NCBI GenBank assembly: GCA_026936335.1
Contig: JAPMXV010000049.1
Span: 1 to 64,000, forward strand
DNA: 64,000 bases
Origin: Mantamonas sphyraenae STR306
Lineage: Eukaryota; Protista; CRuMs
Direction: 5' to 3'
Below, in pieces: positions 45,101 through 64,000 of the stretch. Every line of letters begins with the position of its first letter. The stretch's first letter is position 1. The notes beneath the pieces were generated by a model. The model was given only the letters and a program-made list of their open reading frames with translations. It had not been told where the DNA came from and made no database searches. The position numbers were made by a program, and so were the translations under genes.

Positions 45101-46416
45101 GAGCGACCCCACGAAACGTACGCGCCACAAAACGCAGCCGCGACTTGTTTCCCGTCGCCCGTGACAAGCTCTCGCAGTTCGGTTTCGTTGCGCAACTGCT
45201 GCGCGTCCCGTTCGTCTTGCCCGGGCTCTTCGTCCAGGACAAGAAATTGTTCGATTCGCTTGAGAGACACACGTGTTTGCGCCAGAATTGCCAGCACAAT
45301 GGGGAGCATAGCCATGGGCACACGCAAAATGGCGAGCATGGCCAGGGCGGCAAACGCCGTCGAGGCCGGCGGCATGGACCCAGTGTCGGCCACAAGTGAC
45401 GCAAACATGGCCACTGTCATAATCAATGGCGTGCCCACAATCACGGTGATCAGCAGACCGCGCTGGGTCATCGACTTGAAAATCGCCTCCATCTCCAAAC
45501 GCCGGCGGTCCGACAGTAGCTGGGAGAATGAGGCCTCCCACGCGTAGAACTTGATCACCTGGATGCTGAGAAGCACTTCGTTGATGAGACTGGTGCGCTT
45601 TCCCGTCTGCTTGAGCGACTCTCGGCGGAGGCCGATGAAGCGCTTGACCACGATGGCGTTCAGCGGTCCGGACAACACCAATATACCAAAGGCAACAAAG
45701 CCATACCAACCGACCAGGTTGATAAGCAGCACGAGCGCAACCACGAGCTGCACGGGTGCAAACATGCCCAGGTTCAGCCACTGGGCAAGCTCTCGCAAGC
45801 GCTGCGAATCGTTGGACAGCAAAGTGACCACCTCACCCGGTCCATGCACACGCTGCGCCTCTGTAGTCAGCCGAAAACTCTTGGAATAGATGAGCGTGAT
45901 GATCAACGTCCGCGCTTGCGAGCCGATCCGCCAGACCATCTGCTGGCTCTGAAAGTTGCAATACGTGCCGATGATGGGCACGAACAGAAGGAGCAAGGCA
46001 TACGTGATGCCTTCGTTGCCCACTGCGCCACGTTCGAGCCATTCGATGAGAACCTGCAGAAGCAAGGGGCCCGCGAAAAGCGAACATGCAGCCACACCGT
46101 ACGTGAGCACCGAGCGGACCCATGGCCACAGGAACGTTTTGATCAGCGCGCCCACAAGGGATGTCTGGCCTGGTTTCCAGTGCTCTCGAAAACGCTCCAG
46201 CACAGCTTGTGGCATGTCTTCGGAGTCGAGCTCTGGAAGATCCGGCTGCTCCAGAGGCCGCTCATAGCCGAGCTTGATGAGGTCGCCGATCCAAAGAAAG
46301 TGCAGACGCGAGAATATATTGGAGGTAAACTCCTTGCTTCGCCCTTGGTGGTCTACACCCATCGTGCAGCAGGTCCGAAAGTGTTTGGTGGGGCCGCGCA
46401 AGTGCAACTTTCCCAT
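42163..46416 (-). CDS. ABCC/MRP transporter, short form (TMD1-NBD1-TMD2-NBD2)
   Basis: GKVGSGKS, LSGGQKARI, LDDPLSAVD; GRTGAGKS, LSVGQRQL, LDEATA; FFDTTPQGRIINRFSKD. Confidence 0.95.
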   Translation of the reverse strand: MGKLHLRGPTKHFRTCCTMGVDHQGRSKEFTSNIFSRLHFLWIGDLIKLGYERPLEQPDLPELDSEDMPQAVLERFREHWKPGQTSLVGALIKTFLWPWVRSVLTYGVAACSLFAGPLLLQVLIEWLERGAVGNEGITYALLLLFVPIIGTYCNFQSQQMVWRIGSQARTLIITLIYSKSFRLTTEAQRVHGPGEVVTLLSNDSQRLRELAQWLNLGMFAPVQLVVALVLLINLVGWYGFVAFGILVLSGPLNAIVVKRFIGLRRESLKQTGKRTSLINEVLLSIQVIKFYAWEASFSQLLSDRRRLEMEAIFKSMTQRGLLITVIVGTPLIMTVAMFASLVADTGSMPPASTAFAALAMLAILRVPMAMLPIVLAILAQTRVSLKRIEQFLVLDEEPGQDERDAQQLRNETELRELVTGDGKQVAAAFCGAYVSWGRSAKELQEGAEAETQAQEAEEANHVMEAVPGVELLEVTEIHSDALEEWHGSEEDNESVASDEEENEVDTTPLNAVTVQLEPGKEGQDSAQGEEGDEQGQQGERGVTNTLRDVSVLIKAGDLTSVIGKVGSGKSSLLAALTGTMMVQRGKVLLRGTVSLAAQQPFILNGTVRDNILFFSSFDEERYNAVIQACSLLPDLEMMAKGDRTMIGERGITLSGGQKARIALARCVYREADIYMLDDPLSAVDSHVGAHIFEQVVCKLLAGKTRVLVTNQLDYLARSDHIVMMHGGCVAEQGTFDELNNSGREFSQLMDEFQVHQREATEVTDQAELDVDAGSGSSGGAAALGAGVGKVDRPLDKAKSSEGGDDELMTEEERKAGRIPWSIYLLYFTPKSRRWLGAAFLLMMLVDIVTRIGADWWLSRMTEDAFGWTDEVYLVVYGVITVVACALIYARSLVHAVFSYTSSMVLHEGMLAQVLAAPMAFFDTTPQGRIINRFSKDLDEIDQLLPQSILPFIATMMQITVLLIILCTLSPLLLIVVAILMAFFYHLQKYFRATSLELQRLESISNSPLIAHVSESLNGQHAIRTFGLVPQFLEKNIAHQVENLKAFWALRSATHWYGFRLEAIGTTIEGVLAVLIAVNPRAISPSLAALSLTYGMQLGLMLNRFGSEITKVERHFNSVERVATYSDTEVVPVERHTVGDIPDEEWPNRGAIEFDHVSLRYRPGLDLALRDANFRVEAGERIGVVGRTGAGKSTLLAALFRTVELEDGHGHIRVDGVDLAQLKLGAFRCRIGIIPQSPVVFSGTVRSNLDPFGTVDDDEVLWTALQQAQLDETVREMEGGLDADIDEGGANLSVGQRQLVCLARALLRKPSVLVLDEATASVDRKTDEVIQEAIREHFGHATIISIAHRLATIIDYDRILVMDAGQVAEYASPRELLSDPGSLFSGLVDASGEESAAYLRRVALGEIDSVGEQSKKDR

Positions 46417-46536
46417 CGGCCCAGAGCGTCGGCATCACCACGGCACACTTCCATACATCGTCTACAGTGTACGCCCGTGTCCAAAAAACAACTTCATTCA
46501 GTTGTCGTCGTGTTTGGGCACACATGACCCCATCTT

Positions 46537-49500
46537 TCATCCCTCGGAAAACTCCTCGCTCGCCAGCGCCTCCAGCACATCGACCTCGCCCTTGGCCATG
46601 CGCTTGAGGTATGCACTGGTGGCAGGTCCCGTCTCCTCGACCATGGACAGAAACAAACTCTTGGGATTCTCCAGCAGCTCGGCCGGCGAGCCAAACTCGC
46701 CCACACGGCCCTTGTCCATCACCAGCACACGGTCCGAGTCCATGATGGTGTTCAAACGATGGGCAATCGTCAACACAGTGCACTCTGCAAACTCCCGTCG
46801 GATGGTCTCTTGGATCATGTGGTCTGTCTCGTTGTCCACCGCTGCCGTCGCTTCGTCCAGCACAAGCACACGTGCACGCTTCAGCAGCGCACGTGCAAGG
46901 CACATCAGCTGGCGCTGGCCCACCGAAAAGTTCTCTCCGTTTTCCACAACCTCGCTCTCCAGCATGTCCGGCAGATCTCGCACCGCAGCGTGCAGATGCG
47001 CACCCTCCAGCGCCTGCCAAAGCTGGTCGTCGCTGTACTGATGAAACGGGTCCAGGTTGCTCCTCACCGTGCCTGTGAACAGCACCGGATCCTGTGGGAT
47101 GATGGCCAGTTTCGAACGCAGATCCTGCAGGCCAATCTGGCTGATGTCCACCCCGTCAATCTCGATGCTGCCTTGACGCAGCTCCGTCATGCGGAACAGT
47201 GCCACAATCAGCGACGACTTGCCTGCTCCTGTGCGTCCCACAATGCCCACCTTTTCCTGGGCACAAATGTCCAGGCTCACGCCACGCAGCACGTCGTGCA
47301 GCTCGTCCCGGTAGCGCATAAACACGTTCTTCAGCTGCACGCGTCCCTGTGCAGGCCACGACTGCTCCGGTCGGTTGTCCTTCACAATCAGTGCTGCCTC
47401 TTCGGGCATGGTGCTGTACGCCTGCACGCGTTCCACCGCGTTCAAGCGCATTTCGAGCTCAGCGACGTTGCGAACGGTCATTTTCAGAGCCGTGCTCGAA
47501 GACAACGCGTACGTGATGGCCAGACCTGCCATCGATGCAGAGACATTGCCCACGGCCAACACCGCAAACAGAGCCGCAAAGAACACAATGCCGTTTGCGA
47601 TCAGCTCCAACCGCAGGCTCATCCAGCGATTGAATTGCTTCAGGCTCCAGAAGGGATGCACGTTCATGTCCAGACGCTCAAAGTGCTCTTTCTCAAACTG
47701 CGGCACACGAGCGAATGCCCGCACTGTCACGAGGCCGCTCAGCGTCTCGGAAAAGTGGATGAAGATGGGAGACCTCGTTGTTGATTCGAGGCGCTTCAGC
47801 TCGCGCGATGTGCATCTCATGCGCTTTTGCATCAGGTGGTATGCGTACGCAAAGCCCGTCAACGGGATCAGGAACAGCGGTGTCACGCCTGCAATGAGCG
47901 CCGCCGTGGACAGGAGAGTGAGGCACGTTGCCAAGAACTTGGACAACGACGGCATGATGGTGTTGTCCACATCATCCATGTCCTTGGAGAAGCGATTCAG
48001 AATGCGTCCGATGGGCGTGACGTCAAAGAACATCACCGGCGCGCGCATCACGTTGTTCATCAGCATGTTGTGCAGCTTGGTCGACGCGCGGATGCCCGCA
48101 TAGTTGATCACATAGCCACGCGCAAGCATCACCAGACTCACCAACACTGTCAAGCCAAGGTAAACCTCGATGTACGACACCGTCTGTGCATCCGTCGCGT
48201 CTGTGTCCGCTGCCCAGATCGCAAGCCACAGGTTGATCCCGATCCCGCCCGCCTCTCCACCCACCATCAGCAGCACAATCACAATCCATGTCAACACAGA
48301 CCCTGCACTCGCCATGTAGTCTAGGTACACGCGCAGCTTCACAGAACCCGTTTCACGCTCCTCCTCCTGCACCAGCTCGCCCTGCTTCGCCTTGTCCTCC
48401 GCCTCGTCCTCGCCTGCAATTCCGCTGCGATCTGCCGTCTTGCTGTTGGACAAACTGCGTTCGCCTGCCGTATCGCTTGTGACGCTGTCCGACGTCTTGA
48501 CACGCACCGTCAGCTTGGCTGCGCCCGCGCCTGCTCCTGGAGGCACAGCCACAGGTTCGGTTGCCGCAGCCGCCGCATCCACGTCTCCGTCTGCTGCCTC
48601 GCTTTGGTCCGTTTCCGCTGCACTCTCGTCCTCCAGCAGCGAGCCAAGATCCATCCCTGTGGCCAGCAGCTCCTCGTACGTGCCCTGCGCGAGCTGCGAC
48701 CCTCCCTCGTCCATCGCCAGGATCACATCGGCACTTTCCAGGTACTGCAATTGGTGGGTCACCAGCACCCGTGTCTTGTTTGCCAGCACCCCGTTGATGC
48801 ACGCGTTGAAGATATGCTTGCCCACATGCGCGTCCACAGCACTCAGAGGGTCGTCCAACAGGTAGATCTGCGCATCGGCATACACAGCACGCGCAATCGA
48901 CACCCTCTGCTTCTGTCCGCCGCTCAGGTTGATGCCACGCTCTCCAATCTCCGTCATGTCGCCCGCAGGCAGCATGTCCAGGTCGGCCGTCAGTGCACAC
49001 GACTCCACCACGCTGCGGTACCGTTCCTCGTCGTATGCGTTTCCAAACAGGATGTTGTCTCGCACCGTGGCGTTCTGGATCCACGCCTGCTGGCTCACGT
49101 ACGCCACGCTTCCGCGCACGCTGATGTTTCCCTTCACCATCGGGATTTCGCCCAGGATGCCCGCCAGCAGCGACGACTTGCCACAGCCCACACGGCCAAT
49201 CACCATGGCCAGCTGGCCTGCGTCCACAGACAGACTCAGGTCGACCACTGCTGGGCCGCGCTTGCTCGTCTCGCTGTCCTCCGTGTCGTCGTCCTCCACG
49301 TCCTCCACGTCATCGTCCGACTCGTCTTCTTCCTCCATTTCCTCCCCGTTGCTGTGCTCGCCTTCTCCCTGGCCCTTGGCTGCCTTTTTCGCGGCCTTCT
49401 TCTCCGCCTTGGCCTTCTTCTTTTCTGCTTTCGTACGCAGATCCAACGCCTGGGCCTGATTCCAGTCCAGGGTAACGTTGTCCACAAGGATCCCCGTGGT

Positions 49501-50841
49501 GTCATCCTTGACATGTGCGGTGTAATCCACGCGGTTTTGCATGTCCTCACTGTCCAGATAGGCGGCCAGACGCACAGCCGACACGCGTGCCGACTGCAGC
49601 TCGTCCATCACCATTGGCAGCGCGTACAACGGGTAGCGCAACAGCGAAAACAGAGCCAACGAAGTGAACACCACCTCGGGCGTCAGCTCGTTGCCCAGTG
49701 CAGCAAACACGGCAAACGAGCCAGCGGATCCCAACAACGGCGCAGCTTTTGTCACGATTGAAAGCAACGTGAGAAGGTTGACGCGACGTCGAAGCACCAA
49801 CAGCTCGGCAGCACGCACACCAAAGATGCGCTCCAGAAAGTCCTGTTCCCAGGCGTAATATTTGATCACGCGGATGCCTTGCAGCACTTCGTTGACGCAT
49901 CGAATCCGCTCATCCGTCCGCTCCCGGTTCTTCTTGTGCAGCCTCCCCACAATGGACATACATCTCACATTCACAATCATGGATCCCACCAGGAGAGCCA
50001 CGCCAATGAGCGCAGCGGGCCCGAGGAAATCCAGCAAAAGAACCAAAATCACAAACACCCGCACAGGCAGACTCCACAGCTCATGGGCTGACATCAGAAA
50101 CACAGACACACGCTGGGCATCGGTTGACATCAAATTGACCACCGTGCCAACTGTTGTGCCTCCACGCGAACGTGCACTGAGCCGCAGTGCCTTGCGAAAC
50201 ACGGCAGCCATCAACGCAGCTCGCATCTTCATGTTCAGGCCCGCCAAGTTGAACACATAGTTGTTGATGACCAGAGAGTTGACCATGCCCGCAAGAAAGA
50301 ACAGCACAGGGAAGAGAAGCCCCACCCAGAGCGACCCGGGACTCTGGAGCCAGACGATCAAGGCGTGCAAGATGTAAGGCGTCACGATCTGCGTGGCCGC
50401 GTTGACAACCTCCTCCACCGCTGTCCAGCGCATCTGCGAGCCCCACACAAGAATGAAGGCAGTGGCGATCTTCCTGTTTCTCGAGTCAGCAGCTGAAAAC
50501 CTCGAGCATCTCTCGAGCTCTCCTCCCCCTTTTTTGTGCTCACACACACACACACCTTGACCCACGCAGGTCGCTGCATCGCTCCCACGCATCACTAAAC
50601 AGCGTGGCAGAACACCTCGACGTCTCTGAAGACAGAAGCACAGGCAGATCGCCGTGCGTCGGCACACGTCGCAGGGCGATGTCTATCAAATCGCTCACGT
50701 GCCCATAAGTCCAACGGTGCAGCAGCTTCCGCTGTTCAGGACGACGACGACGATATCGATGTGGTCCATTCCCCTCCTCTTCTGCCACGGGTCGAGAAGC
50801 AAGCAATTGAACCTGGTCGCGCTTCGTTTGCAGAATTCCAT
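46537..50841 (-). CDS. ABCC/MRP transporter, short form, tandem paralogue (intron 50561-50474; start uncertain)
   Basis: GRVGCGKS, LSGGQKQRV, GRTGAGKS, FSVGQRQL. The N-terminal lasso-like exon LLHRWTYGHVSDLI..DLPVL is spliced in frame. ATG 50841 needs one extra G to be in frame. Confidence 0.92.
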
Positions 50842-50894
50842 TTCGCCTGCTTCCCCCGGCGCTAGCGCACCGGCAACCTCTCCACTCTCACCCC

Positions 50895-53800
50895 TCACCC
50901 AAACAACGTCGTGCCTGCAGGACTCTCCCACTCGTCTTCCTGGCTCCACAGCGCGTCTACATCTACATGCGTGTCCACGGCCTGTGCCAACACACTGGTC
51001 ACGTGCTCCGTACTCAACGCCTTGTCTGCAGCTGCAATCAAGCGTGCCTGGATCTCCTCGCTGCTTTCGGTCGGCTGCGGCTCCGGTTCGGGCGTTTCGT
51101 TGTCGTCGCTCTTGTTCTTCTCACCGTGCAGCTCCTCTGGGGCTGCCACGACTTGCGGAACACCTTCCAGCGCACCCACGCGCTCGTCGTCACCCGAAGC
51201 ATCGCTGTGGCCATCGTCTTCGCTCGGTTGCTTGCCCAGCGGCCTCTGCCCGTGCACGTTGATAGACCCTTGCTCCTCCACCAGATCCCCGCGCGAGCGC
51301 AACGGATCCAACACAGGGCGCGGCGCAACCATATCCGCCTCTTCGCCCACAGGATGCTCGGGCTGTGCTTCCGGTTCTTCCACAACGAGCCCAGTATGCT
51401 CTCCCTCTGCGGCGTCTCCCTCCTCGTCATCTTCCACAGGCGCCGGCTGCGACTCCCGCAATCCTTCAGCCTCGTCCTCTTCGTCCTCCCCGGGTACAGG
51501 CACCTCCTCCACTTCGCCTCCCAGCGCAGGAATCGCAGGGATCGCTCCTTGCGACTGTTTGTGCTCGCTCTCGAGCGCCTCCATCTTGTCGCTGCGCATG
51601 CCTCGCGACGCACCCACGCTTTCCTCCTCTTTGTCCTCGGGGCCCACGATGTGCATTGTTGGCAGTGCGGTTGCGTTGAATGTGTTGCCAAACAGGTGCA
51701 GCTTGCGCTTCCCACCTGCACGTCCTGCCTCGGCCTCGTCTGCGGCCTCGTCATCGGCGTTTGTGCCGCGCAGCTGACGCTCACGCTCGTGCTCCTCTTC
51801 GAGGCTTCGCCACACACGTCGCCACGCCGTGATGAAGCCAATCATGATCGGCTCATACACCAGTATAGACACCAGGAACGCGGCCCATACGTTCGCAAAC
51901 CAGCCCGTCAGACTCATGCTCTCGTTCCAGCATCGCGAGTACCACATCACCATAAAAGCAGATACGCCCATGCACAGATACGCAAGGAAAAGGGCCAGCT
52001 CGCGCATGTAGAACGGAAACCACGGCCGCGACATCAGCAGCACCCACGAACGATCTCGCTGGTGCTCTTCCTCCTGCACTTCCGGCGTGGGCGATCGCTT
52101 GCGCTTCACCAGCAGCAGTGTAAACAGCCAGCTGGCTGCCACTCCGAAGCACGCACTCTTGAACGCGCTCGACACGCTGAACGAGCTCAGCGCGTCCTCG
52201 TTAAACATGAATGTCTCCGCTGCCATGATCACAAACACGGCCACAACAAGCCTGTGCTCGCGCTGAAGCTCGGTGAACATGTCACCCACGCGCGCTTGAG
52301 ACGATCGCAACACTGAGAACACCATGTGATGGTAGCGCCATGCCATGCGGTACTCCTGCCACAGCGACACTCCGCCGCCTCTAGCGCCCCCAGCCATGGG
52401 TCCACTCTTCTTGGCGCCCTTGCGCTCCTGCACGGCCTCGGGGACAACCACGTTGTTCGACGAGCGCATCCACAGCACAAACGCAGCCAGAACGTGCACC
52501 GCAAACATGCCCACAATGGTCATGGTCGGCACAGACCACGTCTCTTCCTCACAACCACCAAACACAGGCAGCGTCAAACCACGCAGATCGTCAAACTTCA
52601 CCGCGCCTTCGGCGCTCGGCGTGAGCCGCACCGCAAACGCAGTCAAGTGGTTGCATTCGCACACAACCGCATCGCTCGACGTGCTACCAGTTGTGCATCC
52701 GCTCTTGCTCCACGCCTGCGTATTTGTGTTCCAAAACTCGCAGCTGGCCGTGGATGTGTTGGCTCCACTCAGCCCGCTGAATCGGATCTGCACCGGATTC
52801 AGCAACGAGCTGATGTCCAGCGCGGTGCCATCGAGGCCACGCAGCGTCAGATCCGAAACGTTGCCTGAAATCCCTGTGCTCGAGACCCCAGCAACCCATT
52901 GGTAAGGGTTTGCCGCCCACACCGCCATTTGCGAATCCAAACACGTTGGCTGGCTCGTCAGCTGGTCCAGCACAGACGCAGGCAGCGTAAACTGCGCGGA
53001 CGCACCCACAGCACGTGTGCTCGCCGACACTTGGTTGCGCAGCGCACGTTGGCTGGACACACTCACCGCGCTGCCCACAATGTTGCTTGGCGATTCTCCG
53101 CACGCCTGGCGTGAGGACAGAAGTGCCAGCACGTCATTGGCCACAACCAGCAGCCGTTGGTGCGCTACCGCCGCTGTTGTTGCTCCGGCCGCATCCCAGT
53201 CGCTACGTCCTGCTGCTGCATCGGCTGCTTGCATCACAGCCACCATTGCGTCCAAGTCCGCCTGGGCACGCGTCGAGCTGTCCAAGTTCTGCGTCAGCTT
53301 CCACAGCGCTTCCACAGCCACGCTGCTACTGTTCACCTGGATTTCGGAACTCCTTGCCAGAAGCAGCGAAATCAGACGTGCGTTTGCAGTCAGCCCCTGT
53401 GCAAAGTCCGCACGCGTCACGCCCAGGCACGCGCTCGCCAGCGCCTCCACCACGCTTGCGCGTTCGCTTTGACGAGCCGCCAACGTACTGTTGCCCAGGC
53501 CACCCGCGTTCCAACTGCTTGCCAGCGCCAGAGCAACCTCCACTGCGCCCCGACAATCTCCCACACGAGCGAGTGCACTCACTGTGCTGCTGCTTGTGCT
53601 GCTTACACTGCTGATGTTGAATCCAATGCTCACCAGCGATCGCGAACGCGCGCCCGTCGTCGCGTCGTACACGTACGCACTCATGTGAGTAGCCTCTGCG
53701 GGCACCACAAACGATCCACCTGCAACAGCTGTGCGCTCGCTCAACGGCACCTCTACGCCTCCACTCAGCACATATCCGTATGCGTACTGCAACGTCGTCC

Positions 53801-56800
53801 CCACCCACGCCAAACTCTGCATCTTGACCCGCCCTGCGGCTGCGTCCCAGCTCACCGTGTGCGTGCCCGACAGCGGAGCAACCTCCACCATCAGCGTCAC
53901 GTTGGCATATCCAGATACAAAGTTGCCGTTGGTGGCAATGGCTTGCAACACGTACGTGCGTCCCACTGCCAGCTGGTTGGCGTTGATTACAAGCGCCGCG
54001 TTGCTCGTGCCACTGGAAAACAGACCCGTGCTGCTCATGTCCAATGCACTGCTCAACGACACCCAGTTCCACGTCACGACCTCATTCGCACTTGCTTCCA
54101 GCACCACACGCTCATGCGCAAGCACACGCGCACTGCGTCTGCTCACGCTCACCTGCGGCACGGTGGCGGCCACAACTTGCAGTTGCACGCGACTCGTCGC
54201 ACGCCCGTCCACCGTCAGCACAACCTCGTGTGTGCTGCCTGCCGCCAGTGTGTTGGCCGCAATCGTCTTTGTCACCTCGTTGCTCGTCGTGTTCAGTTGC
54301 ACGCCGCAAGTTGCACAGCTCCACACAAATGTGCTGCCCACACTCTTGCTTCCGTCCAGAACCACAGCTTGGCTGCGGCTCACCACACGGTCGCCGCCGT
54401 CCACAAATGCAAATGATTCATCCGCAACCACGGTCACGTTGAAATCCAGCGTCGCATTCACGCTGGCATCTGCTGATGACCACACGCTCACGCGCAGCAC
54501 GTACCACTCTCCTACACTGTGCCACAGGTTGTTGCCCAGCCACAGGCTGCTTGTAGTGCGCGTCACTGCGTCCAGCGTGAGGGTGCGGTTGCCCGAGGAT
54601 CCCACCTGCGTCCATGCAAACGACAGACCACCTGCTGCGCTGCTGCTTCCGTTCACAGCTGCCAGTGCACAAGCGGGCTGTGACGCTGCCACGCTTACGC
54701 TCAGTCCCTGCGATCGTGCAACAAGGCGCTTTGTGCCGCCGCCAAGTGCGCTCACACGCACCACGTCGCCGCTTGTCTTTGTCAGCGTGTGAGTCGCCAC
54801 AGTGCTGTTGTAGCCGTACACATTGAGCACGCGCAGGCTCAACGTGTGGCTGCCAGTTGTCAGCGCGCCCGTGTTGACCACAAGCACGTCGCTCGTGCTC
54901 GCCTGCACCTCCGAGCCGTCCACGCTCCAGTAGAAGCGCACCGCCGCCTCATTCTCCACCACGGCCTGAACTTGCACTGTGTTGTCGCATGGGCCCACGC
55001 GTGCGGGCGCGACAATACGCACAGCCATGCCGTTGGGCGGACTTGGAAGTGCCACTGTGGCAGAGACCCCCAGCAGACTCGCCGTGGGTGCAGACGCAAG
55101 GCGTACGCCTCCCTCGGCAAACGACACCGTGCTACCAATGGCTACAGTGTGACCTGTGCCAAGCAGCACCCACAGCGTCCGAGCGTCCACAAACACACAC
55201 TGCGGCGAGGTGCCAAACGCAGCCACGCTTGCAAACACCCCACCGCAGCTGCCCACGCCTGTCAATCCCGCGCGGTTGGTGTCCTGCGAAAAGGCAACCA
55301 ACAGCGCTGTCTTGTCGCTTACCAAGCGCACGCTGCTCACGGGCACCTGCTGGCCCACCGTCACTGTCATCAGCACAGGTTGCACAAACGCAGCGAGCGT
55401 CACGTTGTTCACCAGCACGCTCACGTTGTAACTACCACCCACCGTGGGTGTGTACGTCGCCGTGTACTTGCCGTTGCCATTGTCCTGCACGCTCACTGCG
55501 AACGAAACGCCAGTGAGTTCGTTTTGCACACGCGCAGAAAACGAATCGCCGCCCGCGCTCAAAAAGTTGCCAAACGCATCGCGAGCTTGAATCTGAAACG
55601 TCGCCGCCGAGTTGAGGTTCGACGCGGTGAGGCCCGCCCCGTTTGCGTCGGAAGTGAGGGCAGAGACGGCGGCCGGAGTCACCCTCAGCACCTGAGGCGA
55701 ATTGGCCACCTGCGCACCCCCTTGCACACGTGCAATCAGTGCGTAGTCGCCCACCTGCGTCAAGTTGACGTTGCGCGAATAGACACCCGCTGCGCTCGCA
55801 CTGCGCTGCAGCTCAAGCGCTGCACCGCTGGCACCAACCTGCACCGTAAAGACATCTGCAGCCATGGTCGTGACGTCACGTGTGTTGTTAAACTGGTCGC
55901 GAGACGTCACAGAGACGAGCGCCAGCTCGCCCGCGCGTGTGCTGATCGACGCCAGCGCAAACGGCGAGTTGGACGCAACCACAGCGTCCGGCAGCACGGC
56001 AAACGTGTACGGCGACCCCAGCACAGGGTTGTCATTCAGCGAAATCGCAGCTGTGACACTGCTAGCCACTGTGGTGCTGAACGACACCCTGTAATGGCCA
56101 GGCAACCCTGTGTACGTTGCGTTGCGCAGCGTTGTCGCACTTGTGGCTGCCACAGTGAACTGCACGGTAAACACGTCGTCCGTGGATGTTGCGTTGTTCC
56201 CAAACGAATCTCTGGCCTGCACCACAAAAGACGTCTGCTGCCCTGCCACGGTGCCTGCAATCGAGCCGCCGAGCACGCGGGACGTGCTCGCCACAGTCGT
56301 TGTCGCCGCAACAATCGTCACCGTAAACGGACTCCCATCAATATCCAGGCCACCAACACGCACGCGCAGGACATTTTCGCCCAGCACCGTGATGTTGTAC
56401 AGCACCATGTACACGCCGTTGCCCACAGCGTTGACCTCATTCTGTGCAACGACGCTCGGGTTGCTCCAACTCACGGTCGGCACGTCGCCCGTGCCCAACC
56501 GCTGGTTCCCAAACCGATCGCGCATCGTCACATTCACCTGTGCCACAAAGCCGGCCACGGCGTTCACCAACGCGCCCGTCGCCGTGCTATTGACCGCACT
56601 CACCACATCTGGCACCACCGTCAGAGCAAGCGGCGATCCAACAAAGCTCTTGCCGTTCACTTGCACAGGCATGGCATACACCCCTGCGGCTGTCAGCACA
56701 ATGGTCACGTTGATCACGCCTTGTCCCGAGTCCGTGTATGAGGTCACCCCGCTCACAAATGGCGAAGTATAGCCGCTCGCGCCGCCAACCACATTGCCAA

Positions 56801-59800
56801 ACACATCGTACAGTTGGATGGCGCCCGAAACTCCCTGGCCAGCCACAGTCGATGTCAACGGTGCCACCAGCAGTCGCGACAACTCTCCCCCCACGTTGGG
56901 GCTGTGAACCACACTCGCGGTTGCGTTGTGCACCTCGAGACCGCTCACGCGCACTCCCAGGCTATACGTACCCGCCACCGTGGCGTTGTAGGACAGCACA
57001 TATTGCATCTCGGTTGACGAATACGTCACCGCCATCGCCAACGTCTGCGCGCCCGCCACGCTGCCACTCACCACGTCGTTGCCCACCGTGCGGTTGTTGC
57101 CAAACACGTCTCGGGTTTGCACACGCAGCTGCGCAACTTCACCCGCACGCGCGCCAGCCAAACCCGCGCCGTACACGACGCTTGCGCTCGCAAACGTGGC
57201 CGCAGCCTGTACTTGCACCGACAGAGGGGAGCCTTGCAACGCCACGCCGCCCAGAGAGGCTTGCACCGTGTATGTGCCCGCCACAGTCGCGTTCAGCACA
57301 TACGAGACGTTGTCGCTCCGCAGCTGCAGGCTCGACGCGCCCGGACCACTCGACACGCTTACGTCAAACACCGCGCTGCTGACGTTCACAATGTTCCCAA
57401 ACACGTCTGCAGGCGTCACACGCACCACGTTGGCCTCGCCTGCGATCATGGCGCCTCCCTGGCCCACGATCACCTGCGACTGCGCGCTCACTGCGCCCGG
57501 CACAACATTCACCGCAAAAGGGCTCCCTGCAACGTGTGCGCCGTTGATCACCACGCTCACTGCGTTTGCTCCTGCTTGTGTAACGTTGTACGTCGACACG
57601 TACGTGTTGTTTGCCACGTACGCGGCCGTACCCTGCACCACGCCGTTCACAAGCACCTGCAGCACCTCCTGCCCGCTCGTTTGCATGTTGTTGAACCGGT
57701 CGAACACGCGCGTCACAATGCTGTGCGCCGTACCGGCAGAGAACGTGCCTGCCGTCTCGCCCGACGACACGCTGTTTGGTCCAAACCCTGACGCCGCGCT
57801 CACCTGTACGGTTGCAGGCGACCCGCTCACGGGGAATGGGCCATACTGCAGACTCAGCGTGTCCACCGCAAACGCGTCGCTGATCGTAAAAGAAAACAGC
57901 GACTGGTAGAAGCGAAACTTCCACTCTGTGGTCGGTGACAACGTCACCGTGTTGGCTGTAAACGTTGCAGGTCCGCTGTGCAGCAGCTCGTCCACCGTCG
58001 TCCACGTGTCAAACGTAGGCCCAAGTGCTATCTGGAGCTCCAATTTCTCCGGTGCCTCGGGCGTGTTGCACGCGTTGTCGTTGGGGTTCGATCCACGCAG
58101 CCAGTAGAACGACAGCGTGTGCGGCCCCGCTGGCTGTGCTTTGGACCGCAGCACGCGTCCACTCGTGTCCCCAAACGACGACCAAGCATTCGCCCCCGCC
58201 TGCACGCCGCACAGTGTGCTCACCGTCGGGCTGTTCTCAAACATTTCCGCTGCCTCTGCGTTGCTGCCAAACCCGTTGCTCTGCACACTGCTCGAGTTGT
58301 ACAGCACCGTCAGCACGTACGAGCCGGCTACGGTTGCGCCAAACTGCGCACTGAATCGCCCGCCGCCTACGTACGCGACCTGCGCTGCAAGTGTCGCGTT
58401 CGAGTTGACCTGTACAAGGGAAAATGACATCGGGTCGTTGCTGCTGCTCCTGTTGTTGCCAAACGCGTCGCGTGTCTGCACCACCACCGTGTCGTTGTTG
58501 CCTGCGACTGCGCTGGTCAGAAGCGCGCCCGAGAACGTCGTCTTTGATGGGTTCAGCTCCGCTGCAACCACACGCATCGCCAGCGACGCCCCTTGCTGGA
58601 TGACCACGCCGTCAAAGCGCACAGCCACGTCGTACGTGCCTGCCACAGTCGCCTGCACAGCGTACACCTGCTGGCCTAGGCCTGCGGCGTGCACGCTCAG
58701 GTTGGCGCTTGCGCTTGTGCTCGCGCCGCTCAGCGTGATGGAGAAGCGTTCCAACGCGCTCACCGACGTGCGGTTGTTGCCAAACGCGTCTCGTTCCTGC
58801 AGAAAGAGCTGTGTCTGCACGCCAGCCACAACGTCTCGCTCCAGAACTGGACCAAATGCGCTGACCAGCGCCCCGCTTGTGGACGCCTGCGGCGCAACCG
58901 TCAGCGAAAACGGCGAGCCAACGACGTGCACGTTGCCGTACGCCACGCGCACCGCGTACGTGCCTGCCAGCGTCACGTTTAGAACTGCTGCCTGTTGGCC
59001 CGCTCCCAGAAACTGCTGCGACGCCGTCGTGCTCACTGCATCGTTGGCATCGATCTGCAGCGTGTATGCCTGGCTCACCAGATTCCCAAACAGATCCCGC
59101 AGCTGCACCGTGAACGAGGCCCCCTGGCCAGCCACCGTGTTCGCCACCGTCGCTGTGCTGCTCAGCGGCGCATACGGCGCACCTGCGATCACCCGCGTGG
59201 CAAACGGAGATCCGAGGATCTCCACTCCCGACACGCCACGCACACTCAAGCTGTAGTTGCCAACCTGCGTCACGTTGAACACACCGCGGTAAATACCCTG
59301 TGCGCCCGAATACGAAAACGTGACGTTGACGCTGACAGTACCCTGCGACTCTCCCTGCAGCATGCCTGTAAACGCGTCGCCTCCCACCGTGCGGTTGTTG
59401 CCAAATGCGTCCTTTGCTTGCACGTAGATCTCGTCCGCCACTGCGCTCACGCTCACTTCCCTCAACGCAACTCCAAACGCACTGCTCGCTGCGTACGCCA
59501 CTGCTCCGGGCTGCACAGTCACCGCCGACACTGCTGTCGACACGCTCACGCCGTCTAACCTCACACTAGCTGCATACACACCAGAGCGCGTGCCATTAAA
59601 CACGCCCGCCAGCGTCGTCTTGCCGTTCACCGCAACAACCACAGCTCCGGCGTTCTCATTGCCCAACCTGAGTTCAACCAGCACACCGCTCGTCCCCGTT
59701 CCCGTGGCGTTGTTGCCGAATGCGTCCCGAAGTTGCACCGTGTATGATCCCTCGATCCCGGCCACATCTGCGCACAGCCCGTGTCAGCAAACTCCCCAAC

Positions 59801-62800
59801 CCTCTCCCTCCCTCCCTCCCTCCCTCCCTCTCTCTCCCTCCCTCCCTTCAACAACGTACAGGTGCCAAATCCATACGCCTTTGAATTGGCAAGCGACACC
59901 GGAGCGGCCACAATCGAAATATTGCTGCGCGGACTGCCAGGTACATCCACGTTGTCCACCTTGATGGACAGGTCATACACGCCGGCTACCGTCATGTTGA
60001 TGCTCGCACGCACCACACCCGGCACTGTACCATGACTCAACACACCTGCCACGTTGCCCAGTGCCACAGAAAAGCGTGACACATCTGCCACGGGGCTCGT
60101 GCGCAGGTTGCCAAACACGTCTCTGCTCTGCACATCCACCACATATGCTTGTCCTGCCACGCCAACTGTGTTCAGCGTGCCATCCACAACCGTGCTTGTT
60201 GTCGCGTCTGCCTGAGCGGCGGCCACAATCAGGCCATCCACTGTACGCGTCGCACCTCCGTTTACTCGCACAGCAAGCGAGTAGGTGCCGCCTTGTGTCA
60301 GATTCGCCACAATTTGATACTGCCCCATGCCCAGCGACTGCACGCTCACGCCTGCTGTGCTCCCGTTGAACTGCGCCCCAAACACGTCCATGTTGCCGGT
60401 GCGGTTGTTTCCAAAGCTGTCCCTTGACTGCACGTCGATGAGCAGCGGCACGCCGGCCACTCCACCCGCAAGTCCTGCTCCGCTCAGCAAACACGTCTGC
60501 ACGTCCACGGCGCCCGCGCTCACCACAAGCGTGTACGGAGACCCAAGCAGGCTGCTGTTCCCGTTCACATAGTTCACGTGCACTGCGTGCACACCACTCT
60601 CCGTCACGTTGTACTCGGCCGTGTGCACTCCCGTGTTGCCTACGTTGACCACCTTGCCACTCACCTCCTTTCCGCTTCCGTTGCTCACAATGCGCACCGA
60701 AAACACGTCGGCCACGCCATTCATGTCGCCCGAGTCGCGCGGTACCGCGTACGTGTCCACCGCTTGGATGGAGAATGTCGACACGCTGCCCGCCGACGAG
60801 CTGTTCAGCCCGTTCCCCGACGCGTAGCTCAGCGAACCGTTCGTGGGGTAATTCACAACCACGCGGTAAGGGCTGCCTGCGACACCAGGCGGATTGGCCA
60901 GCACAAACAGAGCAGGCGCATCGGCGCTGAAGGAAGCACCGTTTCGCAGCTCGCCTCGGATGCTCGACGACGTCGTGTCCTGTGCTGCGCTGCCCGAACC
61001 CTCATCAAACGAAAAGAAGGCCACCAAGTTGCTCTCTGTCGGCAGGACAATGCGCGACACACGTGCTTGGAGCACAGCATCGCTTGCGACCGTGTTCCAG
61101 ATGCGCAGCTCGTCCAGCTGGCCGTTGAAGTATTGCGGGTCCGAGTTGGTCATCTGCCGCCCGATGCTGGCTCCTGCGTTGGCTAGGAAACTGATCGTCG
61201 TCGTCGTGGCCAGGGATGCCACAGCCTGCCCTTGCACCAGCAGCCGCAGTGTGATGCCATTAAAGGTGCACGCCGTGTGGTGCCACGCACCATCTGTGTA
61301 CAAGGTGCTTGCAGGCGATGTCACGCTGTACTGCGCTCCAAGCACATCAAAAATCGAGCACTTCACCTGCCCGTTGATCAGCTGCAGCCAGTAGCCCTTT
61401 TCTAGCCAGCGGAAAATCGTTCCTGTCCCGTTGACGCTGCTCTTGAACCACGTCTCCAGCGTAAACACATTGTTGGTCACCGCTGCCGGGTAGCCCAGAT
61501 ACACGTAGTCGTTCACTCCGTCCAGCGCAAGTGAGAAGCGGTTCACCAGAGGGCCCTCCCGCCCGATTGCCGCGTTGTACACCGCTCGCTGTGTTGCGTT
61601 GAACACAATACGATACCTGCCATCCAGCAAATCGGCCACCGAGCCCACCACGTCCGTGCTCACGTGTTTGGCCGCCCCAAACACAGCCGAGTACAGCTGC
61701 CCTCCGGATGTAAGGTTCGTGCCTGCCCGTCCCGTCGATTGCAACACCAACTCCTTGTTCATGCTCGGCTGTGTTGTTGACAACGGCAAGCCCGTCACCG
61801 ACGATGGTTCCGCGCTCACCTCCACCGTAAATGGCGATCCCTGGATGTGTTTCCGCGAGTCAAACAGACTCGACGGCGTATCCTGCACGTATGTAAGGCT
61901 GCCCACGTGTGTGCCGTTGTGCTTGCCCGTCACATCCACTGCTATCGAGCCGCTCTGTTCATCCATAGCCCACGCAGCAACCAGCCCGACATCGTTTGCG
62001 TTGGCTCCGATTTCCATGCTGAACTGCAGTTCTTTCTGGTTCAACGTGCGGTTCCACACGCGCACGTCGTCCATCAAACCCTGATACACAAGCGCCCCAG
62101 TCGACGCCCCAATCGTCAGTTCCGACGGAGAGCCGTAGTCAAGCGTCGCCGCAAGGGCGCGCGAGTTGATCAAGCCCCCGTCCACGTACAGAGACATGGT
62201 CTGTCCGTTGTAACCACACGCAACATGGTGCCATGTGCTGTCTGCGTACGATGCTGTGGGCGACTGCAGCCGCTGCAGGCCATGCACCTGCACAAAGAAG
62301 ATGCACTCCAGGTAATTGTCAAACAGTCGCACACCCCATCCGTTGCTAGCCCAGCGCAGCAGAAAGTTGTTGCTGCCCACACTGGTCTTGAACCACGCCG
62401 AATACATCACTTGCGCGCTCTGAAATGCGCTCGACGCCGCTACGCGCACATAGTTTGTTCCGCTCGCGGGCCACGAAAGTGCGCTCAACGACGGCCTCGG
62501 GCCTGTGTGACCCATCCATCACAACACATACGCGTCCCAGTCCATGCAAGACACACGCATGCACACATGCATGTTCACATCGTCCCGTCAACCGCCGCCA
62601 TGCGTGTGTGCAGAACGCACGTAAGCGTGTGCCCGTTTTCGCCCCAGCCGGTGTCAGCCTGCTGCCCGTTGAACGCGTTGCCTTTGCCCGCCTCGTGCGC
62701 CCTTCTGCATCACCCCCACGCCCATTTCTGCTCCGTGTACACCATGATGCTCGCCAATGCACATCCTCACTGAATGGCCATGCCTACCATGCCCTTCATA

Positions 62801-63364
62801 CCCCCTCGGGGGTCGTGCAAGGACATGCGTCGTCCTCTTCACACTCTTTGCTCGCGCCAAACACCTACCTTGCAATGTCACTGCCAGTTCGTATGTCCCT
62901 GGCGTGTATGATGTATATGTTGCCGTGTATGTTCCGTTACCGTTGTCCACCACAAGGGCCGTGATCGACGCCGGCCCGGCAAACGACACCACAAACGAAT
63001 CTCCACCGACCGAGATGGCGCTGCTCGCGTTGCGCGCCTCAATCATGAACGACCGGTCGTATCCAGCGATGTGGCTGGTCAACCCCTCGCCTGATGCCCT
63101 CGACAGTGCTGCCACTGTGCCTACCGTTGTCGTTTGGTCGATATCTGTGTGTTGCGGTCACGTTTTCAACACCTCCGTCAGCTCGCGTTTTGAACGTTGG
63201 GATCAATCCCGAAACCGTCCCGGCAACAACCCGTCTTCCATACCCTCCCACACACACGCACCCCCCCCCCCTTCCCCCCTCCCCTCCACACACACACACA
63301 TCCACATACACTGCGCATGAGCACACAAGCTCAAGCAGAGCAGAAGTACCGCGACTCGCAGCAT
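50895..63364 (-). CDS. Giant polycystin-1-like surface protein (~3,950 aa): signal peptide, ~18 filamin-type Ig repeats, 2 LamG, reelin-like domain, REJ, GAIN-GPS, ~5 TM and acidic tail (introns 63309-63145, 62868-62503, 59859-59768)
   Basis: Leader MLRVAVLLLCLSLCAHAQ; repeated RDxFGN..GSPF units; LamG WHH..C..G.MDD/LDE.R.WN; REJ-type GGDRVVS..LDGSKS; GPS CEFWN..W...GC..CECNHLTAFAV. Exons sum to 11,847 nt in frame. Confidence 0.88.
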
Positions 63365-63415
63365 CTCCGGTTTCTTGTTGGCTGCCACTGCGCCGCCGCA
63401 AGCAACGACACCAGC
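63365..63415. promoter_or_regulatory. Putative minimal bidirectional promoter (51 bp)
   Basis: The only sequence between two divergent ATGs: T-rich left side, TGCGCCG core, C/A-rich right side. Confidence 0.5.
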
Positions 63416-64000
63416 ATGCGCGTGGCCCTTTGTGTTCTCCTTGTGTTTGCTGTTGTGCTCCACGCCCACGGCGAATCTGGTGCGTTCCATCCTCTTCCCC
63501 CCGTTCATGCTCAACGAACCCCCTTTCCCCCCCCCACGGATGGGTGTCTCGTTCCCGCCATCCGCTCCCGCCACACACACTGACAACCCCAGCACCTCGC
63601 CTCACAGTCACCTCACAGGGCACCCAGGCTTCACAGTCTGTTGCCACGGGCTCGGGACTCGCCAGCCACATTGCCGGCTACTTCCAAACCTTCACCATCT
63701 CTGCACGCACCGCCGCCGGCGCTGCCGTCGCATCCGGCACCGACAAGTTTCGAGTTCACCTCCAGTCCAACACAGATGCCACCACCATCACCGGCTCTGT
63801 CGTTGACTTTGCAAACGGCACCTACGCTGTCCGCTACGCCTCCTACAATCCAGGCTCCTTTGCCCTCAACGTCCGTCTCGCAGGTCCGTTCACCTCGCCT
63901 CCCCGCATTTTGCCGTTTCCCGCATCCCCACTCGAACATCCCCCCGTTCCCCTTTCCCCTCGCTCCCTTGCACAACCCCACCCCACCTCCACTCTCCGAT
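63416..64000 (+). CDS. 5' end of a paralogous filamin-repeat surface protein (exons 63416-63479 and 63609-63883; continues beyond the window)
   Basis: Signal peptide MRVALCVLLVFAVVLHAHGES. Exon 2 translates VTSQGTQASQSVATGSGLASHIAGYFQTFTISAR..VVDFANGTYAVRYASYNPGSFALNVRLA, homologous to exon 2 of the adjacent gene. Confidence 0.85.

What the first reader, a model, noticed from the sequence alone, without database searches (positions are those of the whole stretch)
62869..64000. Head-to-head pair of paralogous filamin-repeat surface proteins sharing a 51-bp spacer
Seen: the giant minus-strand gene starts at 63364, and a plus-strand gene whose second exon is missing from the ORF track starts at 63416. 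Both have a signal-peptide exon ending in a phase-1 intron, a homologous first filamin repeat (GEGLTSHIAGYDRSF..VVDNGNGTYTATYTSYTPGTYELAVTLQ vs GSGLASHIAGYFQTF..VVDFANGTYAVRYASYNPGSFALNVRLA), and a second phase-1 intron at the same point. DNA divergence is substantial, so the inverted duplication is old. Known: head-to-head paralogue pairs such as collagen IV genes encode co-expressed heteromers. Inference: a co-regulated, possibly heteromeric adhesion or mechanosensory surface system in a protist.
Basis: partly seen in the sequence, partly recalled or inferred. Interest (0 to 1): 0.8.

Follow-up and report, generated by a model that had tools for sequence, protein, structure and literature searches.

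The report
Divergent pair of polycystin-1-like receptor paralogues
Two giant, anciently duplicated surface-receptor genes of a protist sit back to back with 51 bases between their start codons and are both transcribed, but nothing shows that their products pair up, and unrelated genes nearby sit just as close together.

Summary
Gene A (minus strand, ATG at 63364) and gene B (plus strand, ATG at 63416) are 51 bp apart.

- **Shared structure:** each has a signal-peptide exon (55 nt in A, 64 nt in B), a phase-1 intron, a 276-nt filamin-repeat exon and a second phase-1 intron at the same codon.
- **Expression:** a transcript assembly (run X3) contains both mRNAs, spliced exactly at these sites.
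- **Architecture:** both proteins are about 3,900 aa and collinear (29-47% identity). The order is signal peptide, 18 filamin repeats with two LamG domains, REJ, GPS (HL/T), five TM helices and an acidic tail. The TM bundle superposes on human polycystin-1 TM1-5 (Z 20.5).
- **Family:** a third paralogue, C, lies 18 kb downstream of B. It has no paralogous partner; an unrelated esterase gene starts 90 nt from it. A and B are sister genes (98/95 support) and synonymous sites are saturated.
- **Frameshift:** the apparent frameshift in B at 64870-64873 is an assembly artefact. A second one near 74.45 kb is unchecked.

Best reading: an ancient local inverted duplication in a compact genome, probably Mantamonas sphyraenae, leaving a shared minimal promoter region. 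A heteromer is untested and has no support. An overlapping window noted the same pair (s1-604114). Short divergent gaps were noted on other contigs (s1-608015, s1-586134).

The parts
63365..63415 (.). 51-bp spacer between the two start codons. It is the presumed shared minimal promoter and 5'UTR region.
   Evidence: Read directly. The X3 transcript contig of A ends at 63369 and that of B begins at 63419, so the two did not merge. There is no significant dyad: 138 of 300 shuffles do as well. No Rfam match.
63310..63364 (-). Gene A exon 1: a signal peptide of 18 codons plus the first base of a split codon (phase 1).
   Evidence: The peptide has a positive n-region, a hydrophobic core and an A-H-A cleavage motif (by eye; no predictor was run).
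63145..63309 (-). Gene A intron 1 (165 nt, GT..AG, G-rich on the sense strand, contains a poly-C/CA simple repeat on the + strand).
   Evidence: X3 record 10 skips it. Composition, tandem repeats.
62869..63144 (-). Gene A exon 2 (276 nt, phase 1-1): the first filamin repeat.
   Evidence: Pfam PF00630 1.1e-12. Borders from X3 record 10.
62503..62868 (-). Gene A intron 2 (366 nt, phase 1), at the same codon position as B intron 2 and the corresponding intron of paralogue C.
   Evidence: skips 366, CT..AC on the + strand. for C.
59860..62502 (-). Gene A exon 3 (2643 nt): LamG, filamin, LamG, then three filamin repeats.
   Evidence: Pfam Laminin_G_3 3.1e-40 in 2 stretches and Filamin 6.9e-25. Repeat map. 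Donor read.
50895..59767 (-). Gene A exon 4 (after a 92-nt intron, 59768-59859): 13 filamin repeats, REJ, GPS (HL/T), 5 TM, acidic tail and stop codon. The whole protein is 3948 aa.
   Evidence: REJ 1.2e-11 at 53853-54503. GPS 2.8e-9. TM bundle matches PC1 at Z 20.5. The 11,926-nt X3 contig fits a CDS of 11,847 nt.
63416..63479 (+). Gene B exon 1: a signal peptide of 21 codons plus the first base of a split codon (phase 1).
63480..63607 (+). Gene B intron 1 (128 nt, GT..AG, 49% C).
   Evidence: X3 record 11 skips it. Composition.
63608..63883 (+). Gene B exon 2 (276 nt, phase 1-1): the first filamin repeat.
   Evidence: Pfam PF00630 6.5e-11. Borders.
63884..64000 (+). Start of gene B intron 2, which runs to 64261 beyond the window (378 nt, phase 1). 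Exon 3 then runs 64262-75669 and carries LamG, filamin, LamG, 16 filamin repeats, REJ, GPS, 5 TM and an acidic tail.
   Evidence: skips 378, GT..AG. Domains. C-terminus.

Best explanation
A and B are sister paralogues in a three-gene, lineage-specific cluster (A, B, C on one contig) of giant polycystin-1-like surface receptors.

- **Architecture:** each protein has a cleavable signal peptide and an extracellular rod of 18 filamin/Ig repeats carrying two LamG (ConA-like) domains near its tip. Then come a REJ domain, a GAIN/GPS autoproteolysis motif (HL/T), a five-helix membrane bundle with the fold of polycystin-1 TM1-5, and a long acidic cytoplasmic tail.
- **Origin:** an ancient local inverted duplication put the two 5' ends together. 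In this compact genome (probably Mantamonas sphyraenae) only 51 bp remain between the start codons. Both genes must therefore be transcribed from one minimal, overlapping promoter region with very short 5'UTRs.
- **What is shown:** anatomy, paralogy, splicing, transcription of both genes, and fold.
- **What is inferred:** the shared bidirectional promoter, and a function in substrate adhesion or force sensing. In that model, pull on the rod acts through the GPS-cleaved stalk on the TM1-5 bundle and tail.

The head-to-head layout is most simply a relic of how the duplication happened plus genome compaction. It is not evidence that the products assemble with each other.
For: - **Starts, spacer and exon borders:**
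- **Expression:** both mRNAs are present and spliced in transcript assembly X3 (record 10, 11,926 nt, for A; record 11, 7,814 nt, for B). Their ends lie 49 nt apart and the contigs did not merge.
- **Collinear paralogy:** 47% identity in Fil1, 35% in LamG1, 37% over the next 600 aa, 29% over 2,000 aa and 44% in TM4-5.
- **Age:** pS is 0.69-0.77, which is saturated.
- **Repeat count:** 18 filamin repeats in each protein.
- **Domains:** REJ, GPS and LamG by Pfam.
- **Fold:** the model has mean pLDDT 81. Its TM part aligns to PC1 residues 3063-3622 at Z 20.5, rmsd 2.6 over 208 residues. Its N-terminal part aligns to GAIN subdomain B at Z 8-11.
- **Family size:** in this genome the GPS-5TM module is found only in A, B and C, all on contig C49.
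- **Tree:** (A,B) 98/95, with C as sister at 91/85.
- **Introns:** C shares intron 2 but lacks intron 1.
- **Other close pairs:** unrelated genes sit head to head at 90 nt (a DUF676 esterase next to C) and at 5 nt between first ATGs (a DEAD-box helicase next to a NuA4 subunit).
- **Organism:** the assembly statistics match the published M. sphyraenae genome, which is 25.06 Mb in 78 contigs at 59.2% GC.
Against: - No TSS data exist, and contig ends are not transcript ends.
- Expression rests on a single RNA assembly, and its depth figures cannot rank genes.
- The reference shows a second frame change in B between TM3 and TM4 (about 74437-74466) that I could not check against reads. If it is real, the reference allele of B would lack TM4, TM5 and the tail.
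- The organism is identified from assembly statistics only.
- My ORF-based census of divergent spacers over 310 kb was noisy and gave only three validated examples.
- Function is inferred purely from domain homology.
Confidence: 0.75

Rival explanations
1. A and B form an obligate heteromeric receptor, and the head-to-head layout is kept by selection so that the two chains are made in fixed proportion, as with collagen IV alpha1/alpha2.
For: Both genes are expressed in the same sample from a 51-bp shared region. They have kept the same overall architecture and the same number of filamin repeats (18) since an ancient duplication. COL4A-type head-to-head pairs with a bidirectional promoter are a documented precedent (bioRxiv 10.1101/2023.10.18.563013, title and abstract listed).
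Against: - No binding test was made.
- The closest relative, C, is not paired with a paralogue.
- Equally short divergent gaps join unrelated genes here.
- The part of polycystin-1 that contacts polycystin-2 in solved complexes (TM6-11; my own knowledge of those structures) is absent, since the proteins end after TM5 plus a tail.
- Word depths differ about 2-fold (63 vs 146), although depth is a poor measure.
Confidence: 0.1
2. The arrangement is only a by-product of genome compaction. Each gene has its own core promoter, embedded in the partner's first exon or intron, and the two are regulated independently.
For: Unrelated genes on this contig are also nearly abutting head to head. Other first-stage notes report many 52-62-nt divergent gaps on other contigs (unchecked). 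The spacer holds no significant shared motif or dyad. The two first introns share no conserved inverted element.
Against: With 51 bp between the ATGs, and transcript contigs that do not overlap, two fully independent promoters are hard to fit. In other eukaryotes, transcription at such short divergent gaps is usually coupled (general knowledge, not tested here).
Confidence: 0.3
3. B is a decaying pseudogene copy. It is transcribed but carries frameshifts.
For: The reference sequence has two frame changes in B exon 3, at 64870-64873 and at about 74437-74466.
Against: - All three read sets lack the first one. They show two in-frame alleles (TTC-CTC and TTT-CTC), and the reference is a chimera of the two, which marks it as an assembly artefact at a heterozygous site.
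- No stop codon occurs in any of the roughly 3,900 codons of the corrected frames.
- Downstream of the second shift, 400 codons stay open and TM4-5 are 44% identical to A.
- REJ and GPS score well.
Confidence: 0.06

Closest known systems
Polycystin-1 / PKD1-REJ family (human PKD1, PKD1L, PKDREJ, sea-urchin REJ proteins)
   Same: Both have a large modular ectodomain followed by a REJ domain, a GAIN/GPS site with HL/T, and a membrane bundle. That bundle superposes on PC1 TM1-5 at Z 20.5, rmsd 2.6 A over 208 residues.
   Different: There is no PLAT domain in the first cytoplasmic loop and no TM6-11 channel-like domain. The ectodomain is a rod of 18 filamin repeats with LamG domains instead of PKD/LRR/C-lectin modules, and the tail is long and acidic. 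The best sequence relatives of the module are protist proteins: Ancoracysta, Capsaspora CAOG_06609, Picozoa and Rhodelphis, with E 5e-26 at best.
Adhesion GPCRs
   Same: The GAIN subdomain B and GPS motif match at Z 8-11 in structure and E 3e-10 in sequence.
   Different: There are five TM helices, not seven. No 7tm_2 match was found, and the TM part scores only Z 5-6 against class B / adhesion GPCR bundles.
Head-to-head paralogue pairs with a bidirectional promoter (COL4A1/COL4A2 type)
   Same: Two paralogues from an inverted duplication are transcribed divergently from a very short shared region, and both are expressed (precedent listed).
   Different: In collagen IV the products are known to co-assemble. 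Here no assembly is shown, the family's third member has no paralogous partner, and short divergent gaps also join unrelated genes.
Filamin (actin cross-linker)
   Same: The same Ig-like filamin/ABP280 repeat, PF00630.
   Different: These repeats sit behind a signal peptide and are therefore extracellular. There is no calponin-homology actin-binding domain. The genome has at least 172 such repeats in many giant secreted or membrane proteins.

Membership tests
Polycystin-1 / REJ family | REJ domain (PF02010) | tested here: met
   B: 1.8e-29 and 1.8e-40 in the six-frame search. A: 1.2e-11, over the cut-off. C: 1.2e-34.
Polycystin-1 / REJ family | GAIN/GPS autoproteolysis motif with HL/T just before TM1 | tested here: met
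   PF01825 scores 2.8e-9 in A and 6.7e-12 in B. The HLT motif is present in A, B and C. The fold matches GAIN subdomain B at Z 8-11. Cleavage itself was not tested.
Polycystin-1 / REJ family | TM1-5 bundle of PC1 | tested here: met
   Model residues 141-401 align to PC1 3063-3622 at Z 20.5, rmsd 2.6, 208 residues aligned. The next unrelated bundles score Z about 6. Model mean pLDDT is 81.
Polycystin-1 / REJ family | PLAT domain in the loop after TM1 | tested here: not met
   No Pfam PLAT match at E <= 0.1 in the GPS-TM pieces of A and B. The loop is about 80-100 residues and is modelled at low confidence.
Polycystin-1 / REJ family | TM6-11 channel-like (PKD_channel) domain | tested here: not met
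   Only five hydrophobic helices are present, followed by an acidic tail. None of the 33 PF08016 hits in this genome lies on contig C49.
Adhesion GPCR | Seven-helix 7tm_2 domain after the GPS | tested here: not met
   No PF00002 match. There are five helices. Z is 6 or less against class B / adhesion bundles.
Bidirectional-promoter paralogue pair (COL4A type) | Paralogues in divergent orientation with a short shared 5' region | tested here: met
   51 bp between the ATGs. Paralogy. The junction is confirmed on an independent short-read contig.
Bidirectional-promoter paralogue pair (COL4A type) | Co-ordinated expression from the shared region | tested here: inconclusive
   Both mRNAs occur in the one RNA assembly available, and their contig ends are 49 nt apart. 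There are no TSS data and no second condition.
Bidirectional-promoter paralogue pair (COL4A type) | The two products assemble into one complex | not tested
   No complex prediction was sent. I do not claim binding, there is no rationale for which domains would touch, and B's TM module cannot be given unaltered because of the reference frame change.

The most novel reading that the evidence does not exclude
A and B could be the two chains of an obligate heteromeric, channel-less polycystin-1-type mechanoreceptor of a deep-branching (CRuMs) flagellate. In this reading their stoichiometry is fixed by a 51-bp minimal bidirectional promoter. That would make the PC1 TM1-5 module a free-standing, self-associating signalling unit that predates its fusion to a channel-like domain.
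Probability: 0.08. Interest if true: 0.65.

Novelty: new member of a known kind. Interest (0 to 1): 0.4.

Why it matters
The pair is a clean, transcript-supported example of an ancient inverted duplication that left two giant receptor genes sharing a minimal promoter region. It lies in what is probably the only sequenced genome of the CRuMs supergroup.

The proteins themselves are probably the more interesting part. They show that the REJ-GAIN-TM1-5 half of polycystin-1 exists on its own, without PLAT or a channel-like domain, behind a filamin/LamG rod. That bears on how polycystin-1 was assembled in evolution and on what TM1-5 does.

For the specific claim of a co-regulated heteromer the evidence is thin, and the short spacer is a genome-wide habit. 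As a regulatory or complex-forming system, this finding is therefore ordinary until TSS, co-expression and binding data exist.

Tried and rejected
- **Inverted DNA repeat:** a search around the spacer gave only short 70-93% arms of 14-22 nt, and no trace of the duplication survives at DNA level.
- **Dyad in the spacer:** the best is 7 of 8 bases, matched by 138 of 300 shuffles, so I rejected it.
- **Rfam and tandem repeats near the heads:** no RNA family. Only poly-C/CA simple repeats in the introns.
- **Census of divergent ATG-ATG gaps on 310 kb of the contig:** long ORFs are too noisy in this GC-rich genome with its short first exons. A codon model trained on A, B and C was too narrow, and a GC3/RNY filter left few pairs. 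Most 47-52-nt candidates looked non-coding. Only three neighbours were validated by Pfam. The census is inconclusive and the examples are anecdotal.
- **Word search for relatives of A's GPS-TM region:** one weak coral ADGRV1-like hit.
- **Search for mantamonad orthologues to date the duplication:** none among the best 20 profile hits that I looked up.
- **PDB sequence search:** only GPS matches, and no TM match by sequence.
- **Misassembly of the junction:** rejected, because an independent short-read contig spans it.
- **Complex prediction:** not sent. I make no binding claim, there is no rationale for a contact domain, and B's TM module is not available unaltered.
- **Spliced models:** all exons were searched separately by reference.

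Full report
**1. Observation**

The window is contig C49:1-64000 of a 25,061,354-base, 78-contig genome. On the minus strand an ATG at 63364 opens a typical signal peptide. On the plus strand an ATG at 63416 opens another. The 51 bases 63365-63415 lie between them.

I fetched the sequence beyond the window and laid four public runs on C49:62001-68000. Runs X1 and X2 behave as genomic assemblies, because their contigs keep the introns. X3 behaves as a transcript assembly.

- **X3 record 10** (11,926 nt) follows gene A. It skips 62503-62868 and the first intron, and it ends at 63369.
- **X3 record 11** (7,814 nt) follows gene B. It starts at 63419, skips 63480-63607 and 63884-64261, and then runs uninterrupted through exon 3.

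This fixes the exon borders.

- **Gene A:** E1 63364-63310, E2 63144-62869, E3 62502-59860. A 92-nt intron follows, then E4 59767-50895.
- **Gene B:** E1 63416-63479, E2 63608-63883, E3 from 64262.

All introns are GT..AG and phase 1. Both second exons are exactly 276 nt. Both match Pfam Filamin and are each other's best match, at 47-49% identity and E 8e-16. X1 record 1 (26.5 kb), built from short reads, spans the junction, so the arrangement is not an assembly error.

**2. What the genes encode**

I searched each exon separately by reference.

- **Size:** A is 3,948 aa. B is about 3,915 aa.
- **Collinearity:** Fil1 47% identity, first LamG 35%, the next 600 residues 37%, a 2,000-residue stretch 29%, and TM4-5 44%.
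- **Repeats:** an HMM iterated from the Pfam-detected repeats finds 18 filamin repeats in each protein.
- **LamG:** each has two LamG (Laminin_G_3) domains near the N-terminus.
- **REJ:** scores are 1.8e-29/1.8e-40 for B, 1.2e-11 for A and 1.2e-34 for C.
- **GPS:** both have a GPS motif with the canonical HL/T.
- **Membrane part:** five hydrophobic helices, then a long acidic tail ending in an acidic-Trp motif.

An AlphaFold model of A's GPS-to-TM5 part, built on a 20-row alignment, reached mean pLDDT 81. Its N-terminal sandwich matches GAIN subdomain B of adhesion GPCRs at Z 8-11. Its helical part aligns to human polycystin-1 residues 3063-3622 in ten PC1/PC2 cryo-EM entries, at Z 17.7-20.5, rmsd 2.4-2.8 A and 183-211 residues. 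The next helical bundles score about Z 6.

No PLAT and no PKD_channel domain is present. A and B are therefore polycystin-1-like 'half' receptors: REJ-GAIN-TM1-5 behind a filamin/LamG rod.

A profile of the module finds full-length relatives in Ancoracysta, Capsaspora (CAOG_06609), Picozoa, Rhodelphis and in metagenomes. Several of these carry REJ, but none is close, with a best E of 5e-26.

**3. Family and history**

In this genome the module occurs only three times, all on C49: A, B and a third gene, C, at about 93.5-106 kb on the plus strand.

- **Introns:** C keeps the intron after Fil1 at the same codon and phase, but its signal peptide and Fil1 lie in one exon. A's third intron is absent from B.
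- **Tree:** a maximum-likelihood tree of the module puts A with B (98/95) and C as their sister (91/85). Terminal branches are about one change per site.
- **Divergence:** synonymous differences between A and B are saturated (pS 0.69-0.77), and DNA identity is 46-53%.
- **DNA trace:** no inverted repeat survives.

The simplest history is a local duplication giving C and the A/B ancestor. A later but still ancient inverted duplication then put the two 5' ends together.

**4. Is B intact?**

The reference has an extra base at 64870-64873 that breaks the frame. X2 lacks a T there, and X1 and X3 lack a C. The two resulting sequences are in-frame synonymous alleles (TTC-CTC and TTT-CTC), and the reference is a chimera of them. 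This is a consensus artefact at a heterozygous site. It is plausible for a polished long-read assembly of an organism for which the genome paper reports biallelic SNPs.

A second frame change lies between TM3 and TM4, at about 74437-74466. Downstream of it, 400 codons stay open, and TM4-5 are 44% identical to A. I therefore expect another artefact, but this remains open.

**5. The spacer and regulation**

The two X3 contigs stop 49 nt apart and did not merge. Long antisense overlap at appreciable coverage is therefore unlikely, and the 5'UTRs are probably shorter than about 50 nt. Contig ends are not TSSs, however.

The spacer has no significant dyad, and Rfam finds nothing.

The short gap is not peculiar to this pair.

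- Gene C's start lies 90 nt from the start of an unrelated DUF676 esterase gene on the other strand.
- A DEAD-box helicase gene and a NuA4-subunit gene have first ATGs 5 nt apart at 125.5 kb.
- Other first-stage notes report many 52-62-nt divergent gaps elsewhere in this genome. I could not verify those, and my own ORF census was too noisy to count them.

The 51-bp spacing therefore reflects genome compaction, and by itself says little about functional coupling.

**6. Organism**

The size, contig number and GC content equal those published for the FALCON assembly of Mantamonas sphyraenae: 25.06 Mb, 78 primary contigs, 59.19% GC (PMC10492846). This is an inference from statistics, not from sequence identity.

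**7. Verdict**

The anatomy is real and well supported. The pair is an ancient inverted duplicate of a polycystin-1-like receptor gene, and both copies are expressed from a minimal shared region.

The idea of a co-regulated heteromer is not excluded, but it has no positive evidence. It is weakened by the paralogue C, which has no paralogous partner, and by the genome-wide short divergent gaps. It is also weakened by the absence of the PC1 domain that mediates the known heteromer, a point that rests on my own knowledge of the solved complexes.

I rate it a new member of a known kind (a head-to-head paralogue pair). It is of moderate interest, mainly for the proteins' architecture, which other notes of this scan already cover (s1-603714).

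Noticed in passing
L003:2870-2873 (C49 64870-64873): The reference carries one extra base in B's exon 3. The read sets show two in-frame synonymous alleles, and the reference looks like a chimera of both. This is an assembly or polishing artefact at a heterozygous site, and it may recur elsewhere in this assembly.
   Followed up: yes
L005:2437-2466 (C49 74437-74466): There is a second apparent frame change in B between TM3 and TM4. It has no intron signals and the downstream frame is conserved. It was not checked against reads.
   Followed up: partly
window 44000-64000 and on to C49 84000: The + strand is C-rich whatever the gene direction. A (minus strand) has G-rich third codon positions (G 0.42, C 0.30) and G-rich introns (39-57% G). 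B (plus strand) has C-rich third positions (C 0.52, G 0.21) and C-rich introns (49-53% C). The strand bias therefore does not follow transcription, and the two paralogues have opposite codon preferences.
   Followed up: partly
C49 93520-~106000 (+), loci L006/L007: A third paralogue, C, has SP and Fil1 in one exon, the conserved phase-1 intron, two LamG domains, a filamin rod, REJ, GPS, 5 TM and a very long acidic, coiled-coil-like tail. Its frame changes near 94.8 kb, at the place where B has its artefact. Whether that is an intron or an indel was not resolved.
   Followed up: partly
L006:203-1429 (-) (C49 92203-93429): A DUF676 putative serine esterase gene starts 90 nt from gene C's start codon on the opposite strand.
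   Followed up: yes
L009:2522-6273 (C49 122522-126273): A DEAD-box helicase gene (minus strand) and a NuA4/EAF6-like gene (plus strand) have their first ATGs only 5 nt apart. This is an extreme divergent gap between unrelated genes. The true start codons were not verified.
   Followed up: partly
window 50898-50960 (-); L005:3620-3666 (+); L007 ~3300 (+): All three cytoplasmic tails carry an acidic cluster with a single Trp. In A and B it sits at the very C-terminus. It resembles the acidic Arp2/3-binding motif of WASP-family proteins (also noted in s1-604259).
   Followed up: no
G000, many contigs: The genome holds at least 172 filamin repeats in more than 30 loci, with open frames up to 10,900 aa. 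It also has 33 PKD_channel hits and further REJ genes on C42, C71, C1, C8 and C4. This amounts to a large polycystin/TRPP toolkit.
   Followed up: no
G000:C43:96740-100901 (-) and G000:C59:215931-221691 (+): Filamin-repeat hits on these two contigs have identical scores pair by pair. This suggests a very recent segmental duplicate or an uncollapsed haplotig.
   Followed up: no
window 59768-59859 (-): A's third intron is 92 nt and made almost entirely of GGGA/GGGAG repeats on the sense strand (57% G). It has no polypyrimidine tract, only a CTGAC-like branch site near its 3' end.
   Followed up: no
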